The notes under the pieces were generated by a model. The model did no database searches, was not told the DNA's origin, and saw nothing but the letters and a program-made list of their open reading frames with translations. Positions 6,489 to 19,520 of a stretch of DNA of 64,000 nt are shown here, in pieces; within the stretch, counting starts at the first letter, position 1, and the number at the start of each line of letters is the position of its first letter. A program made the position numbers and the translations under genes. Source of the stretch: Podarcis erhardii (lineage: Eukaryota); assembly GCA_964252035.1 (NCBI GenBank), contig OZ176204.1; one strand, given 5' to 3'.

Positions 6489-6494
6489 TTTAAT
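6489..6494 (-). terminator. Candidate distal poly(A) signal ATTAAA
   Basis: The + strand TTTAAT is followed on the minus strand by a GU/U-rich tract (6441-6468, atagtgttctccaatttgtttccttctgtg). Other AATAAA candidates lie at 5943-5948, 9007-9012, 9553-9558 and 10699-10704. Confidence 0.3.
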
Positions 6495-8783
6495 ACAGCA
6501 TTAAACTGCTATAATGCTAAAAGCAAGCCATATACTATTCAGCAAATAAGGCACATGTCGGAATGCCATTTTATGGACAATCCACAACAGAGGTTTGACA
6601 GTCTTTTAAACAACCCAGCTAACCAGTTATCACCTTCATGGCTGAAATAAGCCTGGCACCCCTGAGGCCTATGTCCATAGAAATGTTATCATTATTATTA
6701 TTTTTAAGCTGTACAAATTAATTACCAGTTACAGAAGAGAAAAATTATACGACTGAAACTGAAAAGAAGTCTGTGGGTACAGCTATGATGTTTTTTTCTT
6801 TAAGTTTATAAGTAATTGAACTAATCTAAACTGGTAGACGTTAATATGATAAAAGGGTTAGTTTTATACAATGTAGTGATTGCTGCTCTAAATAACCTTT
6901 GTAAAGGAAAAACAAGCCCAGTACAGGATTGAACCTATCTCCTATTTTAGCATGGTTTAAGAATCACACAAACAATCTTAATATAATGGAGCTATGTGAA
7001 ACCATAAAGCGTAAGATGCATAAAATACGTGCACATGCATATTGTATCATTTTATGAATTCTAAATAAAAAATAAACACAAAATGCTTGTGTCAATCTAA
7101 CTCTTTCTTGATTATGGCCACTGATTGATAGTACTGTATTGTTTTACGGCTAGCATGGCATCGCAAATCCCACAGCGTCATTGCAAACCGCTGTGAGCCT
7201 TCCTTAGCAAAACAATGTCTCCCCCCTCCCAGCCACCCACCCTGAAGAGATAGTGTAAAAATAATAATAATCAGATAATATAACCGTGTTACAGAATTTC
7301 TGAAAGCCAAATCTGGACTCTTTGGATCATTTCACACATTACATTGCAACAAAACGAGGGAGCTGCAGCAAACCCTGCTGTCGAATCTAAATGATGTTAC
7401 ATGTTTGTCACATTTACCCCTTGCATGTTAAGGTATGCAGTAGGTTATTTTAAAAAAACTAGATGTACACCTGAAAAACATAATGTGTGAATAAGTCCTT
7501 TGAGCATTTGCACTTCAAATCTAACTCTTTGCACCGGAGTCCCTGCTATGCTACTATAAAACTGTGCCGACATAGAAGTCATTATAGCCCCATCCTAAGC
7601 ATAAGTTTTGGGAGTGGGCTATAAACAAGTATGTCTTTCATAAGGTCATAAAGTGATAGTGTAACATCTGATTCTTACCAAATCAGTTATAGCTTCTCTA
7701 AAAAGGCAATACTTTTCAAAATACACATATAAATAAACCGAATAAGCATATTAATATAAGTTCTAAACACCTGAATAATATACTGGTTACTTAATACTGA
7801 TATTTTCATCCAAAAGAAAACAACAACAAAAACAACAACAATATGGCTTAAAGAATTGCAAGGGTTTTTTTTTCTTCATGTCAGAATTATGTACCAACTT
7901 TCATATAATATTCTATGTAGACAATATTTCCTTCTTAATGTAGTTCTGTTGCATACTTTATACAGACAAAAGCATTGTAAAAAAAAGAAAAAAGCAAAAG
8001 CAAAAAAGCAAATTCCTTTCATAAATATTTTCTTGAGGATACACCCTTAATTTTGTATAATACTTAAGAAAACTCTTAGCTCTGTTAGTATTCTAGTAAA
8101 AAAATCCAAGGCCCTTTTTGAAAGCTTCAGAGTTGTAAAAACACTTTTTAAAAAACCCAAACAGAACAAACAATATTATTTTTTTTAAAAAAAGGCCCTC
8201 AAATATATACAAAAAAAGGTTACTGCAAAGAGTTTCCAGATAACAATTCAGTATTACAAAGAAATATTTGTAACCATTCAAAAATTTAAACACCTAAAAA
8301 GTTTTTCCCCCAAAATACACACACAGTATTAAAAAGAAGAAAGGAACTCTATGTCAAGTATAACTCAAGATAAATACACATCTGCAAGTAAAACTGTAAA
8401 ATATTTCATAACAGGGGTAAACAGTAATATCAATTGACTACATCTATTAACTGCACACGATTGTCCCTTTGATATTCATCCTAAGAAAACACAAACCTTC
8501 ATTTGTATAGCTACAATTTCAGTCGTCTTACTGAGTGCTACAGCCATTCAACAATACTTCCAGAGGCAGTGGTTTTTGTAGACATAAAACAGATAGGCAC
8601 TGAGATCATACATATATATATATATACACATACACACTGCCTTAAAGAATGACAGTGTGGATCATTCCGTTAAGTCTGAATTAAAACCCGATATCTGCTT
8701 GCTTAAATTTTAACAAGGTTTACATGAGGATGACTTAGCACTTGCATTATCAGAAGCCTATATAATGTCTAGAACAACGTAGT

Positions 8784-9016
8784 TCCAGTTACAGATAGGT
8801 AGCCGTGTTGGTCTGCCATAGTCAAAACAAAATAAAAAAATTCCTTCCAGTAGCACCTTAAAGACCAACTAAGTTAGTTCTTGGTATGAGCTTTCGTGTG
8901 CATGCACGAAATCTGAAGAAGTATCTGAAGTATCTGAAGAAGTGTGCATGCACACGAAAGCTCATACCAAGAACTAACTTAGTTGGTCTTTACTGGAAGG
9001 AATTTTTTTATTTTGT
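8784..9016. mobile_element. Penelope-like (PLE) LTR-derived insertion, inverted arrangement, 14-bp TSD
   Basis: TAGAACAACGTAGT occurs at 8770-8783 and 9017-9030. Inverted arms lie at about 8826-8907 and 8944-9017. Contains tagcaccttaaagaccaac...gagctttcgtgtgcatgcac, shared with the 19305 remnant. Confidence 0.75.
8930..8967 (+). ncRNA. Minimal type I hammerhead ribozyme motif (PLE type)
   Basis: GUAU-CUGAAGA-A-GUGUG(CAUG)CACAC-GAAA-GC-UC^AUAC. It has the conserved core, a 5-bp stem II, a 4-bp stem I (GUAU/AUAC) and a palindromic AGCU stem III. There is one extra A after the CUGANGA box. Confidence 0.7.
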
Positions 9017-12000
9017 TAGAACAACGTAGTGGGCACCATGTAGCCAAAGGTAAGCACTTCTAAGTCCCACTGATTACAACAGGTTTTGGGAGTTGCCTCA
9101 TACAAAACCAAATAGTTGGCCCACCAAAATAAGAGCTCTCTATTCTGCCAGGCAGTAGTTCACAGAAGTGGTGGGTGAAGTCATTTCCCAGCCCTGCTAT
9201 CAGAGAACCCTTTTTTAAAGGTGCCAGATATTTTTCCTAGAATCTTAGGCATGCAACCCATATGGTCTGCGCTCTGGCCTATCCCCTGATGTGCTTAACT
9301 TTGCCATTGAAATGGATGGGACCTAAAAAGTGCTTCGCTTTGGTTGGATCATGCTGCTGCTTTAGTTACAACTAGTTTGGGAGGGGGAGGAATCTAACTC
9401 CATAATCCTAAACTCACATTTCATTTTCATTGGAATTTCCAGGTTCAATCAATTAGGCTCAAAAAGATTTTACACAAACAGGAGTTACATGGAACAGCAG
9501 GTGGTTCTGTGACACATAAAGCATGGCACTTTTCATGCATAGATCTCTATATTTTATTTTGTTGTTGGCACATTTGTTGGAAAGCCAGTGCCCCCCACAT
9601 ACCAGAGGTAAATGTAACATTGGCACTGGTAGGAGAGTTGCTGGAGACCTGCGAGTTGCCAATTCACATGGGTGAATATGCACAACATCTTTTCAGATGG
9701 GCCTTCCAAAATCAGCACTTAGTACCCCCTGAAAAGCCACTACTGAATATTAGAGGGGGGGGGGCAGCTCCAAAGTGGTTTTTAAGACTGCTCTATGTGC
9801 TGCTGAAAGAAGTCAAATTTAGAAGCGTCTTCATATACCAGTCAAAATAATCCTGCACATGTACCTACAGGAATGGCTTATCTTCATATGTAAAAAAGAA
9901 GTGTGCAAACTGCCCGTTGTTTTTTAGCACATGCTGAAAAACAACTTCTAGATTTTCCAGGTGTGTTGTTTACAAAGCATATTTTTGGCATTTTCTGCAA
10001 GTGGATGTGATGTAACAGCACTAAATTTGCACTAGAAATGTATTTCTTAAAAAGAGACAGATTGTTTTTTGACAAAAGTTGGGCATTGCAACCCCAGTTA
10101 CAAGCTGTCTTAGTTCATATTTTACTTTTCCTTATTAGATATGGAGATATTACTGCTAACATTTTATAAGTGGTCAAAGAGAAATACTGTATATGATATA
10201 ACATATGGCTCTTTTGTAACCATATTGTTAACTCTCTTGCAAGAGTGAAACAGAATTAACACTAAAAGTTCAAGTTTTTAAATGCCACCACTCACCTCCA
10301 CATGCCCAAGATAAGGAGCACTGTACTGTTCTTTACACAGTCACTTAATCTGGCAATGAAATGGAAGGAAAGTTAGAACTTTTTATACAGGGGCAGTCTT
10401 CCTTGCTTTCTGCTTCTTTCTGCTTTTGATCGGCCCCTTGATCATGTAAACAAAGCAGAGAAAGAAGTTCAGGGGTTTCTGTCTCAGGATAACTGCTCAT
10501 GTAAACAATATCTGATGCAGAAATGGCCTGATCCCTTGCTTTTGTATAATCACAATATCTTCAAGTGGTCACTGAGTCACTCATAAGTCACTCAGGGAAC
10601 TATATTTGAAAACAAAAGCCACACTGGCTCTACAGTTGTATTTGACAGAATTCATAATACCCACAGAAGGTAGGCATGGCGATTCATGTTACACCCATTT
10701 TATTGAGCCCTAGGGAGAATATATGACTTGTCAAATTTAATAAAATCAGTCATTATTGCAGGATCTAGCCCAGAGATACTGAGGCACAGTCACACGCAGT
10801 GCTGCTAGATAGTGCTATAAAGTATTTAAATTAAGTTAATTAATTTCCACGGATTCTGAATGAATACTGCCTGCCATCCATATGAGACTTATTTGCTTAA
10901 TGGACATTAGGAAAATAAAAGGAATTTATGTTTTCGGCAACATCATGACAGGTTCACAACGAAATTTGTTACTGGAATAGGGCTTCTACTAATAGATTTA
11001 GAAAGAGTGCACCTGTTTCTTTAAGAGCTCTGCCACATTCAGCTTCAGATTGACTTGCTGCTGTACTTAAGTGCTGGTGTCCTCTGCTCCTAACCACTGC
11101 GGCATGGAACCAGGATACACAGCAATTATTTTCAGAATGTTGGTGGTGGTATGAGAAGCATCACTTCTCATCGTGTATCCAGTTTTGTTAAAGAGGTTTG
11201 GCAGGTTTCATAGTGCTTCAGAAACCTGCAACATCTCTTTGGCCAAGGTAATAGTGAAAAAGACACCTCCACCATAGCACTTTCAATGCTCTTCAAAACC
11301 ACTGTCTGCCTTTAGGCCCACATCCCACAGGTGGGACCACAGCTCAGTGGTAGGGGATATGCAGAAGTCTGGAGGAAAGTGTTTACTGCCTGAGATCCTT
11401 GAGAGTTGCTGCCAGCCTGACTCAGCATAAGACAAATTCCTGTGTTTACAACGGGAATGGAAGGAGCCAGAGCTTCTGGACCACTGCAACGATGGTTGAT
11501 GATCTGCCCAAACTCTCTTTGTGCTGCAGCCCACTATTACCCTACTGGGTTCCAGATGTGAAACATCTTTTAAGTATTGTTTTCTTATATATGATGATAA
11601 TCAGTGAAGCACTTCACTGCTACTGCTGATAGAAATACTCACCGCAAGTGTTTATGGATAACATGGCATCATCCCTAGCTGATCTGACATGAGATGATTT
11701 GACACAGAAATGATCCTGCTTTGCCAGGAACCAAAACATCCCCGCTGAAGATCATCTCAAGTGAATACTACCCAGAGCCACAGTCCACCTGTGATTCTCT
11801 GTAGAAACAGGTTGTGCAGGCAAATGGTCCAGTCACTGCTTTATCCCTGCTCTTAAATTTAATACAGAATACAGAAAGGAGTTAGAGCAGCTCCAATAAT
11901 ATATCTGCTTCACAAATAACACTTGAAAATTCTCTCACTTGGTGCAATTATTACATTTCCCCTAAACTAATATGGTAATGTTTTGGAAGATAGGAAGAAG

Positions 12001-14247
12001 GGACAGCTTTGCAGTGGAATTTCCTTTATGCATTCCTATGATATCCCTATGGCTACTTAGATATATTATTTGATATTTAATAGGAAATTGGTGTAGTTGT
12101 TTCCTTAAAGTGTCACTGAATACACAATAAGTAGGCCCAAGTATATATATATATTCAGTTAAGGTATGGAGAATACGTCTCCCATGATTCACAGTAAATT
12201 TACCTTTGCCCACCCTGGTCCTAAATATTTGTACTGGCATATATTCTGCAGTGATGTTGAAGTAGCAACCCTGTAACGGCATGCAGTATGGTTCGGGTAA
12301 TCTAAACAGTTTGGGTGCTCAGTCTTGTGATTGAGCTTTTTTTGGTCTTATGTGTAACAAAAAGTAGGCCACATAGAAGCTTATAAGCAGTGATGAAAGC
12401 AAGTGAATGAGGTGTTTCTTGTCCCAAACTCTCATCATGCTTTTTTGCTGTTCTAAGCTCAAGGCTGATTAAGGCGTTATGGCCCCCCACCAAAAATCTT
12501 TGGCGTAGTGGCACATGAGGATTCTCCATAACCATTTTGCAAAATCATAGGGTCTGCTGTTGTGAACATGGAGAGCTTCTGAACTATTACATTGCTCTGC
12601 AGGCACCTTTTTGTGATGAGCTTGATTACAAACATGCTTTGTGCAGAGTACCACCATGCCACAACAATTTTCAGTGGACCCTATCTACTTGAGGGGTGTA
12701 ACGTATGAAATTCCTTCATTTATAATGTAGGTGAAATTGTTGATGCCATATTGCTTGGCAAGTCCCAAGTGTCTATCCATTCCTGCCCTCTGCCATCACT
12801 GTCTTTAAGTCATGTGTGGCTCAAGCACAATTCAAACAGAGCTCATAAATGAATACATCAACAATATTTTTTGTTTAGGAACCTCTGAAGGGTTACAGGG
12901 AAGCTCCCACTATCTATTGTTTAGGGAGCTGATGTGTGTCTTTAGATGTGGAGAGTACGTACATCTTGAACATAGTGTGTGAGCAGATCAGTTAGTGACA
13001 CCTCATTTCACTACAGGAAAAATCTAACTGTAGGGTCTTTGCTCTAAAAGGAGCAAAGGGCCAAACTGCACTACAGAGTATGTGAATGAGAATTATAATG
13101 GGGCAGGGATAGCCTGCTATGGTGAGACAAAGAAAGTTGAATTTATCATGTTGGCTATATAAGGTGGTTGGTTATGTGGCATTCACAACAGTAGGAATTT
13201 CAGCCACCACTTGCATAGCAAGTACATAAAGAAAGGAAGGAGAAGCTTTAGAAATTGTGACAAGGGAACGGTATTGGTCAACAACGCCCTGAAACAACAA
13301 ATGCATCCTAAGTGCATTTGCTCAAAAGTAGCCTTATAGATTTCAGCGGAACTTCTTCTGAGGAAGCATGCTTAAGACTACTGGCTAAGAAAGATGAATT
13401 CCTGATCGACCCTTCCTGTTCTACCATTATACTTCCATGCAAAACACTCCCTCAAACAATTATTCACTTGTTCTTTTTAACCCTCAAGATTCTATTAATC
13501 AAAAGCCTACCAAAAGTCTCATTTCAGTGGCCCTGGACTCTTGGAAAGCAAGCAATCATATGCAACTCTCAGACCAACCCTAAAGTCAAGGAAAATGAAC
13601 ATTCCCCCCTCCCACGCACACGCACACGCACACCTTTTTCTAGCTTAGCCCTCATTGTATTAGAAAAATATATCGTTTGTGGCATTGGCTAGAACCCACA
13701 TTTAACATTTCCACCCATTTTGTCTAATGCCTGCAAAAGCCATGACGTTATTATATACCTCTCTTGACAAACAATACTGTTTCACCTGGGCAGGATATTG
13801 GAACTGTGTAAACAATCAACAGAAACCACGTCGGTGATTTCATCATGAACATGATGGGCACAGCCCAGCAAAAACTGCTACTGCACAACCCCCCCCCCAC
13901 CTGTTTGTGTGAGGCTGTTATGCAAGACTCACAGGAAAGGACGGCGGCTGTACAGCAGCAGCAGTGCTTGACGATTTGTGCCCTACATCAGTAACATCTG
14001 TTTCATATATATATATATATATAAACACACCATAGTCCTATAAATACAACTTGCACGTATACACATACACAGGAAAAGGGTTACATTCTATTAAAGGTAA
14101 GGCGTATTATTAGTTTGTTGATAGGCAATATTGGTGATGTTTGGGGTTCTTGTCTGATGTTCTTTTTTCCTCCCCTCCTCTTTCATTTTGACTGTTTGCT
14201 GCCAGAGGATCTAAAAACGTGGTGGCAGAGGTGATCCCTGTGTTGAT

Positions 14248-14556
<309 letters not shown>

Positions 14557-17521: not shown

Positions 17522-19304
17522 CTTTATGTTGCTATATTCCCATAATAACTATTACATATCCTGTAATAATTGTCACAGCAAGAATGTGTATGTGTACACC
17601 AAGACTAAGGATACCACTCAAATTTAGTTCAAATTTCTTCAAAATTATTGTTCATCCCCAACCAAAGTTTCTTATGGTTTTTTGTGATCAATTAGCAACT
17701 TTTATATGTGTTTATGTATCCAAGGCTTACATCCCTCCAGTCCCTTTCATCTTGTTTGTATGAATAAATGTACACTGTTAATATGGAATACAAAGTGAAA
17801 GAGAGCTGTTCTTTGCACAAATGTGCATTCTGACCAATGCACACTTGCATTACACACCAATTTAAGCTAGGGAAAGCACTTTAAGTCATGTGTGAAATGC
17901 CCCAAGTAATGGAAGGATTTGGCTCAACCCTTCATTTCATACACAGATGATTTCTCTGATAGTTTTCTGGATGCCAAACAGGTAATGCTGCAGGTAGTTT
18001 ATATGTATTTTTCCTTCTAGAACACAGGACAAGAATCTTTTAAAGGAGAGAAATATTTTTGGTGACCTGTCTGGAATTCTGTGAGCAATTTATATGTTTC
18101 CAAAAACCCTTCGCTCCCAATAAAACAGTATCCAGCAAAGCAAACCAACTACCAAGTGGCTGAATCTGAACCCAGTTCTGCAGCTGTCGTTACAGAAACA
18201 GCAGAGAAGGCCAAAATAACAACAATTTTTTAAAAAGGAACTTGACAGGAGGCCAGTCAGGAAGAAGCCACGGCATTGATGCTTCTCCTAGAAAGTGGCA
18301 GGAGGGAGGGGGGAAATGACCATTCAGAGGCTGGCATCTGGGTGGCAACGCTGCCAAGAACACCCAAGGAAATGGATATACATGCCAGCTCAATCACGAA
18401 CCCACTGTGACGTCAAACCAAACGGGCAGCAAATAGCTAATTGAAACAAAAAGCAGCAGCCTCCTGGAAAGGAGATCTTCTTTCTTTTAGAGCACCACCA
18501 CAGTGCTATTGGTGGTGGGGTGGGGGTGGGGGCGGAAATACAGCCCTAACTAACCACACTGAGAAAGGACTATGTGTTAAAGGGCGACATGGAAACTTCC
18601 CTGAAGCTGTGTGAATGGTGAGCTGCGCTGATTTGAGGAATGAAGGCTGCAATCCTCAGCACACTAGCCTGGGAGTAAAGTTGCCTGAGCTGAGTATAAT
18701 GTGCACGACGTAAATGTATTGGAACATATTGTGTGAGAGAGGGCTACGGTTAATTAGCATTTGTGTTTGCATGTAGTCAAGAGTTCCAGATGAATAGATC
18801 AGGTGCCAAACCGCAACTGATTTGACATGCCACAATTAATTGCATGCTGGTTTGAATCATGCCTTGAAAAATATTGATACAGTCTTAGAAATAACAAATG
18901 TCAGTAGGAAACAATACTATAATGAATTTAAACTACATTTTACTAACTTATTTGGGTTCAGATACATCCAGGTTTTTGTCATCTGATGACATCAAGGCGA
19001 AACAATTGATGGATGTGGATTCCAAAGGGAAGGGTGCCACTTTCCTGCCTCCAATGTCAGTCCTATGAGCTGCGTTTGCACATGGCTTGTTCCAACCAAA
19101 CCATGGTTTAATTGGAAGGAACAGTGCTACACAGAAGTTCCCGTAATGCTGAGCCCTTACTCCTGCCATGTCTCTGAACCTAAGCCCATGTTTATGTTTT
19201 CCCCCAAACAAACCACAAGTGAAGATTCAATTCTGGAATTTTGTGGGAGTTCCCATATGTCATCTTTTCCCAGGGCACACCATCTTTTTCATTATAAAAT
19301 TGTC

Positions 19305-19520
19305 CAGTAGCACCTTGGAGACCAACTAAGTTTGTTCTGCTTTTGTGTTCATGCACACTTCTTCAGATACACTGAAAGAGAAGTCACCAGACCCTTATAG
19401 AGGGTGGGGTGGGGGTTTTCTAAGAAGGGAAGTAGGAGATGGGTGATTGACTCAATGGGTATGGTAAACCTGTTGGCAACTGTTAAGGACTGCAATTAGT
19501 CCTACAAGAAAAAGCAAGGG
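19305..19520. mobile_element. Penelope-like remnant with a degenerate hammerhead (minus strand)
   Basis: ccagtagcaccttggagaccaactaag...atgcacacttcttcagatac is homologous to the 8784 element. Confidence 0.65.

What the first reader, a model, noticed from the sequence alone, without database searches (positions are those of the whole stretch)
8770..9030. Young Penelope-type insertion in the ZCCHC24 3' UTR carrying an intact-looking antisense hammerhead ribozyme
Seen: a perfect 14-bp TSD (TAGAACAACGTAGT) brackets 233 bp of inverted repeat with a stuttered centre (atctgaagaa-gtatctgaag-tatctgaagaa). The + strand at 8930-8967 folds as GUAU/CUGAAGA-A/GUGUG-CAUG-CACAC/GAAA/GC/UC^AUAC. Established: Penelope-like elements carry minimal type I hammerheads whose palindromic stem III (here AGCU) is completed by dimerisation, and they often insert as inverted LTR pairs. 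Inference: this is a recent, possibly polymorphic insertion that places a potentially self-cleaving RNA antisense to a conserved gene's UTR.
Basis: partly seen in the sequence, partly recalled or inferred. Interest (0 to 1): 0.75.

Follow-up and report, generated by a model that had tools for sequence, protein, structure and literature searches.

The report
Penelope retrotransposon fragment with locked hammerhead
This is an ordinary, apparently recent, dead fragment of a lizard Penelope-like retrotransposon, inserted as two mirror-image arms downstream of the ZCCHC24 gene; it carries the small hammerhead ribozyme motif typical of such elements, which is unlikely to cut here.

Summary
A perfect 14-bp target-site duplication (8770-8783 and 9017-9030) brackets a 233-bp insert made of two head-to-head arms. 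[quoted passage not shown] The layout carries the structural marks of a PLE insertion: strong 5' truncation, an adjacent inverted copy, and a 42-nt 'tail' at one end only. I could not link it to a PLE reverse transcriptase gene.

- Only one complete ribozyme is present, and the opposite arm stops inside helix II.
- Any + strand transcript that includes the left arm folds into a -133 kcal/mol hairpin that takes up the ribozyme.
- No Rfam hammerhead model matches.

The ZCCHC24 last coding exon is confirmed on the - strand, with its stop codon at 14248. The insert lies 5.2 kb downstream of that stop, so whether it is inside the 3' UTR is open.

The scan has already noted many inserts of this type on other DNA of this genome. 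Verdict: an ordinary transposon relic of low interest.

The parts
8770..8783 (.). Left copy of the 14-bp target-site duplication
   Evidence: Identical to 9017-9030.
8784..8825 (-). 42-nt extension ('tail') found only on the left arm. It is the 3' end of the left copy when read on the - strand, and it holds an AC-rich stretch.
   Evidence: It has no partner in the right arm. It fits the 30-40-bp tail at one end of PLE insertions (PMC8557442), which lies between the two reverse-transcription start sites (PMC11167929).
8826..8907 (-). Left arm: a 5'-truncated copy in - orientation. It starts inside helix II and so keeps only the 3' half of the hammerhead (GAAA, AGCU, C17, 3' strand of helix I).
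   Evidence: Arms are 100% complementary over 49 + 27 nt. Alignment A1. No CUGANGA lies next to helix II on the - strand.
8911..8943 (+). Centre: three tandem units of the element's 5' tip, ATCTGAAG(AAG)T. The last unit belongs to the complete ribozyme.
   Evidence: TRF row 8911-8943, 3.0 copies; direct repeat D3.
8930..8967 (+). Complete minimal type I hammerhead motif. Helix I is GUAU/AUAC. The core is CUGAAGA. A8941 is unpaired. Helix II is 8942-8955. GAAA follows, then the palindromic AGCU, then C17 at 8963 (predicted cut between 8963 and 8964).
   Evidence: Features as published in PMC4209133.
8944..9016 (+). Right arm: a copy in + orientation that ends at the proximal 3' end (no tail) and lacks 8 nt that the left arm has.
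9017..9030 (.). Right copy of the target-site duplication
   Evidence: Its first T could equally belong to the element, so the boundary is ambiguous by 1 nt.
14248..14355 (-). End of the ZCCHC24 coding sequence (C-terminal domain and stop codon), 5.2 kb upstream of the insert in the gene's direction.
   Evidence: Pfam PF23490 ZCCHC24_C, E 2.9e-24, 85 bits against a cut-off of 27, residues 66-100 of ORF 14248-14550.
19303..19370 (-). Older, single-arm, decayed copy of the same module
   Evidence: About 80% identity by blastn. In the alignment, one helix II pair is broken, GAAA reads AAAA, and C17 with the 3' strand of helix I is deleted.

Best explanation
A dead-on-arrival insertion of the 3'-terminal, non-coding module of a lizard Penelope-like retrotransposon. 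The module runs from the hammerhead to the reverse-transcription start.

Inferred mechanism: the element's endonuclease nicked both target strands 14 bp apart, and each nick primed a cDNA on element RNA. One cDNA began at the distal start site. This is the left arm, with the 42-nt tail, and it stopped inside the palindromic helix II. The other began at the proximal start site. This is the right arm, which ran to the RNA's 5' tip and switched template there, leaving three copies of the tip. Joining the two cDNAs head to head gave the fold-back, and gap repair gave the TSD.

The hammerhead is a passenger motif of the element. Here it has no promoter and no partner copy, and it is held in a long hairpin, so it most likely does nothing. 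Shown: the anatomy, the motif and the folding competition. Inferred: the order of priming and joining, and the lack of activity.
For: - Perfect TSD and arm structure.
- The hammerhead meets all published PLE min-HHR sequence features. It is unique in the window and absent from 200 shuffles (PMC4209133).
- PLE insertions are described as 5'-truncated, often with an adjacent inverted 5'-truncated copy and a 30-40-bp tail at one end only (PMC8557442).
- An Anolis PLE protein cleaves and extends both target strands. It starts reverse transcription at two internal sites, and the sequence between them is the tail (PMC11167929).
- The distance from ribozyme to 3' end here is 84 nt, and 126 nt with the tail. 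In that element the start site is 111-118 nt.
- The Poseidon_Ac hammerhead has the same layout: CUGAGGA, one unpaired base, helix II, GAAA, palindromic ACGU, C17.
- The module has stops in all three frames.
- The older copy at 19303-19370 is single-armed and its ribozyme has decayed.
- Whole-element hairpin: -133.3 kcal/mol, z = -20.7. Ribozyme helices are absent from the minimum-energy fold of every + transcript tested that started at or before 8900.
Against: - No reverse transcriptase or GIY-YIG gene could be linked to this module. The window has no full-length copy, and the metagenome scans gave nothing related.
- No Rfam hammerhead model matches, even at E up to 10 on 71 bases.
- The tail is 42 nt, slightly over the published 30-40.
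- The nick sites are not the ATT motif reported for the Anolis element.
- The 36-nt centre does not follow simply from any one joining scheme.
- No cleavage, expression or population data were obtained.
Confidence: 0.8

Rival explanations
1. The insert comes from a separate small non-autonomous RNA of about 130 nt, headed by the hammerhead and mobilised in trans by PLE protein (SINE-like or retrozyme-like). It would then not be a truncated copy of a full-length element.
For: The module is non-coding. The right arm begins right at the ribozyme, and the tip is reiterated as if it were a true RNA 5' end. Vertebrate non-LTR retrozymes are reported to derive from PLE pLTRs (bioRxiv 10.64898/2026.07.22.740005).
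Against: There is no tandem array here, and tandem arrays define retrozymes. A 5' end at the ribozyme fits equally well with the element's own transcription start or with 5' truncation. One locus cannot separate the two.
Confidence: 0.15
2. A working antisense self-cleaving ribozyme that cuts + strand transcripts opposite the ZCCHC24 3' region.
For: All core positions are canonical, with C17 at 8963.
Against: There is a single complete copy with no partner for helix III in cis. No element promoter is retained upstream. The ribozyme is sequestered by the hairpin. PLE hammerheads cleave poorly in vitro (PMC4209133) or need the element's protein (PMC11167929). No reads beginning or ending at the cut site were found in Anolis RNA-seq (PMC11167929).
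Confidence: 0.03
3. A miniature inverted-repeat DNA transposon (MITE or foldback element).
For: It is short, has inverted arms and is flanked by a TSD.
Against: The termini are not inverted repeats, because the left end has 42 unpaired nt. A 14-bp TSD is longer than DNA transposons usually make (my own knowledge). The same module occurs elsewhere as a single arm. It carries the PLE-type hammerhead.
Confidence: 0.02

Closest known systems
Minimal hammerhead ribozymes of metazoan Penelope-like elements (Cervera and de la Pena 2014, PMC4209133; Lunse et al., RNA Biol, cited in PMC6765202)
   Same: CUGANGA and GAAA core. One unpaired base between A9 and 10.1. A G10.1-C11.1 pair. A long helix II, a 4-bp helix I, and a palindromic helix III that can form only between two copies.
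   Different: It is a single complete copy with no tandem partner, and its complement lies 36 nt upstream in the same DNA strand. Cleavage was not tested.
Poseidon_Ac (PAc), the Anolis carolinensis PLE studied in vitro (Frangieh et al. 2024, PMC11167929)
   Same: The order is the same: hammerhead, then roughly 80-130 nt, then the reverse-transcription start. There are two alternative 3' ends that differ by a tail. The published finding that both target strands are nicked and extended explains the head-to-head arms. The ribozyme layout is the same.
   Different: I saw no sequence similarity to the Poseidon_Ac ribozyme region when reading its consensus. In PAc the ORF begins in the ribozyme, whereas here the module has stops in all frames.
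Complex tandem/inverted PLE insertions with a one-sided tail (Craig et al. 2021, PMC8557442)
   Same: 5' truncation, an adjacent inverted 5'-truncated copy, and an extension at one end only.
   Different: This is an extreme miniature: both copies are truncated to about 80-125 nt, and there is no ORF and no tandem pLTR.
Non-LTR retrozymes of animals (Cervera and de la Pena 2020, PMC7229834)
   Same: Short, non-coding, carries a type I hammerhead, and is related to PLEs.
   Different: Retrozymes are tandem arrays that give circular RNAs. This is a single fold-back insertion.

Membership tests
PLE minimal hammerhead (min-HHR) | Conserved core C3-A9 (CUGANGA), G12-A14 (GAA), A15.1-U16.1, and H17 not G | tested here: met
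   8934-8940 is CUGAAGA, 8956-8959 is GAAA, U16.1 is at 8962 and C17 at 8963.
PLE minimal hammerhead (min-HHR) | One unpaired nucleotide between A9 and 10.1, and a G10.1-C11.1 pair | tested here: met
   A8941 is unpaired and G8942 pairs with C8955. Feature listed in PMC4209133.
PLE minimal hammerhead (min-HHR) | Long helix II and short helix I (4-5 bp) | tested here: met
   Helix II is 5 bp plus a tetraloop, within a 14-nt palindrome. Helix I is 4 bp. Feature listed in PMC4209133.
PLE minimal hammerhead (min-HHR) | Palindromic positions 15.x-16.x, so that helix III forms only in a dimer | tested here: met
   AGCU at 8959-8962.
PLE minimal hammerhead (min-HHR) | A second copy nearby to allow the dimeric active fold | tested here: not met
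   The descriptor hits once in 64 kb. The left arm lacks the CUGANGA half.
PLE minimal hammerhead (min-HHR) | Self-cleavage | not testable with these tools
   Needs in vitro transcription assays, with and without PLE protein.
Rfam hammerhead families | Match to a curated covariance model | tested here: not met
   No hammerhead match at E up to 10 on 8400-9400 or on 8915-8985. This may be because the min-HHR has no hairpin helix III, but I did not check that.
Penelope-like element insertion | Association with a telomerase-like RT plus GIY-YIG endonuclease ORF | not testable with these tools
   The window has only four ORFs of 130 aa or more, the longest 229 aa, so no full-length PLE ORF (about 850 aa in Poseidon_Ac); none was scanned against protein families. 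No lizard genome collection is on hand. The metagenome scans gave 0 hits and 4 chance hits.
Penelope-like element insertion | 5' truncation with an adjacent inverted 5'-truncated copy | tested here: met
   Two arms joined head to head. Feature listed in PMC8557442.
Penelope-like element insertion | 30-40-bp tail at one end only | tested here: met
   42 nt at 8784-8825 on the left arm only, slightly longer than published.
Penelope-like element insertion | AT-rich target and ATT cleavage motif (reported for PAc) | tested here: inconclusive
   The empty site is 58% A+T and the inferred nicks are not at ATT.
Non-LTR retrozyme | Tandem head-to-tail repeats of a hammerhead-bearing unit | tested here: not met
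   Only a 9-12-nt stutter is tandem. The unit itself is not repeated in tandem.
MITE / foldback DNA transposon | Terminal inverted repeats at both ends | tested here: not met
   The left terminus 8784-8825 has no inverted partner.
ZCCHC24 3' UTR | The site lies between the stop codon and the polyadenylation site of the mRNA | tested here: inconclusive
   The stop codon is at 14248-14250 and the site is 5.2 kb downstream. Candidate signals lie on both sides of it. Two runs that may be RNA hold 0.56-0.57 of the words of 8301-9500.

The most novel reading that the evidence does not exclude
The perfectly palindromic helix II of the element's hammerhead (14 nt) may be the place where two antisense cDNAs, made at the two nicks, can anneal to each other. 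If so, the ribozyme sequence itself would help to create the head-to-head inverted insertions that are typical of PLEs. Here the left arm stops inside that palindrome.
Probability: 0.15. Interest if true: 0.45.

Novelty: new member of a known kind. Interest (0 to 1): 0.15.

Why it matters
It matters little on its own. It is one more copy of an abundant lizard repeat of a class known since 2014 to carry hammerhead motifs.

Its value is as a clean miniature example. Three known marks of PLE integration can be read at single-base resolution in 233 bp: priming at both nicks, two alternative 3' ends that differ by the tail, and reiteration of the 5' tip.

If the site is inside the ZCCHC24 transcript, the likelier effect on the gene is not the ribozyme. 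It would be a perfect hairpin with a stem of about 76 bp, plus an AATAAA on the gene's strand at 9007-9012.

Tried and rejected
- **Read laying on window:8001-14000 with X1, X4, X15, X23.** There is therefore no genotype, strand or depth evidence.
- **Rfam at a permissive threshold, twice**. No hammerhead was found. The only matches were miRNA-precursor families far below their gathering scores (56 against 100 at best), which merely reflect a long perfect hairpin.
- **Two metagenome-contig scans for copies of the module**. The first gave 0 hits. The second gave 4 hits that share only the 21-mer and are chance matches.
- **Search of the paper library and of the Frangieh supplements for the ribozyme letters**. 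Nothing was found. The Poseidon_Ac consensus, read by eye, is a different family.
- **Search for a CCHC zinc-knuckle exon of ZCCHC24 in the window**. None was found in frame, so only the last coding exon is identified.
- **Share of words in sequencing runs**. Organism A holds 0.87 and organisms B-F hold 0.66-0.70. The gap is about the size of the insert and hints that B-F lack it. Words of a repeat can come from other copies, so I do not count this as a finding.
- **Dimer cofold**. The minimum-energy dimer pairs the two helix II palindromes between molecules and not the AGCU. This says nothing firm about activity.
Full report
**Observation.**
- The window holds TAGAACAACGTAGT twice, at 8770-8783 and 9017-9030, with no mismatch. 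Between the two copies lie 233 bp.
- The insert is a fold-back, but not a simple one. Two blocks of perfect complementarity form the arms: 8859-8907 with 8944-8992 (49 nt), and 8826-8852 with 8991-9017 (27 nt).
- An 8-nt stretch, present only in the left arm, separates the blocks. The first 42 nt (8784-8825) have no partner, and 36 nt lie between the arms.
- The centre holds three tandem units of ATCTGAAG(AAG)T at 8911-8943.
- As RNA, the whole insert folds at -133.3 kcal/mol, z = -20.7 against shuffles.

**The hammerhead.**
- On the + strand, 8930-8967 reads: helix I 5' strand GUAU, core CUGAAGA, an unpaired A, helix II GUGUG-CAUG-CACAC, then GAA, then AGCU, then C17 at 8963, then helix I 3' strand AUAC.
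- Cervera and de la Pena (PMC4209133) list the marks of the PLE minimal hammerhead. [quoted passage not shown] All are present here.
- A descriptor written from these marks finds this one site in the 64-kb window on both strands, and none in 200 dinucleotide-preserving shuffles. The core spacing alone is expected 0.21 times per window.
- No Rfam hammerhead model matches, even when only 71 bases are searched at E up to 10. The miRNA-family matches lie far below their gathering scores and reflect only the hairpin.

**What the element is.**
- Craig et al. (PMC8557442) describe PLE insertions as highly 5'-truncated. They often have an inverted 5'-truncated copy alongside and a 30-40-bp tail at one end only.
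- Frangieh et al. (PMC11167929) show that an Anolis PLE protein cleaves and extends both target strands. Reverse transcription starts at two internal RNA sites, and the sequence between them is the tail.
- The insert fits this point for point. Both arms have their 3' ends outwards against the TSD. The left arm has the 42-nt extension and the right arm does not. The ribozyme-to-end distance is 84 nt, or 126 nt with the tail, against 111-118 nt for the start site in that element.
- The Poseidon_Ac consensus in that paper's supplement has a ribozyme of the same layout: CUGAGGA, one unpaired base, helix II, GAAA, ACGU, C17. Its letters are unrelated, so this is another family.
- Unlike Poseidon_Ac, this module has stops in all three frames.
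- A second, older copy of the module lies at 19303-19370. It is single-armed, which shows that the fold-back arises at insertion. Its ribozyme has decayed: one helix II pair is broken, GAAA reads AAAA, and C17 with the 3' strand of helix I is deleted.
- I could not link the module to a PLE reverse transcriptase. The window has no full-length PLE ORF, and two metagenome scans gave nothing related. Membership therefore rests on structure and on the ribozyme.

**How it most likely arose (inferred).**
- Two nicks 14 bp apart each primed a cDNA. The + strand end at 8783 copied an RNA from the distal start site and stopped inside the helix II palindrome at 8907.
- The - strand end opposite 9017 copied an RNA from the proximal start site to its 5' tip, which begins just in front of the ribozyme. 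It switched template there twice, leaving the stutter.
- Joining and gap repair then gave the fold-back and the TSD. The 36-nt centre does not follow uniquely from any one scheme, so the order of events is a best guess.

**Will the ribozyme work here?** Probably not, for four reasons:
- Only one complete copy exists. The left arm, read on the - strand, starts inside helix II and lacks CUGANGA. Helix III therefore has no partner in cis.
- The insert keeps nothing of the element upstream of the ribozyme.
- Every + strand transcript tested that started at or before 8900 loses helices I and II to the hairpin in its minimum-energy fold. Only starts at 8908 or later leave helix II free. The left arm is transcribed first, so this holds co-transcriptionally too.
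- Published PLE hammerheads cleave poorly even as dimers (PMC4209133). The Anolis one cleaves only with its protein, and no reads begin or end at its cut site in public RNA-seq (PMC11167929).

**Gene context.**
- ORF 14248-14550 (-) ends with the ZCCHC24 C-terminal domain (Pfam PF23490, E 2.9e-24, 85 bits against a cut-off of 27). ZCCHC24 therefore runs on the - strand, its stop codon is at 14248-14250, and the hammerhead is antisense to it.
- The insert lies 5.2 kb downstream of the stop.
- On the - strand, AATAAA or ATTAAA occur at 12076, 11858, 10736, 10699 and 9553, before the insert. One occurs at 9007, inside it. The next are at 6489 and 5939.
- The sequence alone therefore cannot say whether the site is inside the UTR.

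**Reads.**
- The look-up of sequencing runs gave shares of words of 0.86-0.87 for organism A, 0.66-0.70 for organisms B-F and 0.56-0.62 for organism G. Two small runs of organism G may be RNA.
- The gap between A and B-F is about the size of the insert. Words of a repeat may come from other copies, so this is only a hint.
- Polymorphism, transcription and strand remain untested.
- Zero differences in 90 paired sites (the arms plus the TSD) bound the age only loosely. At 1-2 x 10^-9 substitutions per site per year, a rate I assumed, the insert is under roughly 8-17 million years old.

**Comparison and verdict.**
- The scan has noted many inserts of this type on other DNA of this genome. Follow-ups on head-to-head copies of 226-261 bp called them ordinary relics with locked ribozymes.
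- My own folding and anatomy agree with that for this locus.
- It is a new copy of a known kind. It gives a neat example of PLE integration marks, but there is no evidence of any role for ZCCHC24.

Noticed in passing
window 19303-19370: An older, single-arm copy of the same module in - orientation, about 80% identical to the young copy. Its hammerhead is destroyed: C17 and the 3' strand of helix I are deleted, one helix II pair is broken, and GAAA reads AAAA.
   Followed up: partly
window 8831-8836 (+) and 9007-9012 (-): The insert brings an AATAAA hexamer on each strand. The - strand one would meet a ZCCHC24 transcript right as it enters the element, if the UTR reaches that far.
   Followed up: no
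window 8784-8819 (-): Inside the tail, an ATG opens a frame (MADQHGYLSVTG) that stays open to the end of the module. By analogy with Poseidon_Ac, where reverse transcription starts inside the ORF, this could be the start of the family's ORF.
   Followed up: no
window 8867-8988: Rfam miRNA-precursor models (MIR7993, MIR5200, MIR1222, mir-466) match the fold-back at 30-56 bits, well below their gathering scores of 70-100. These are hairpin look-alikes, not miRNA genes.
   Followed up: yes
window 8172-8213: The reads tool would not lay this stretch. By its own words the filter also trips by chance. I left the stretch alone.
   Followed up: no
window 8607-8637: A short (AT)n/(TA)n microsatellite about 130 bp from the insertion site.
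   Followed up: no
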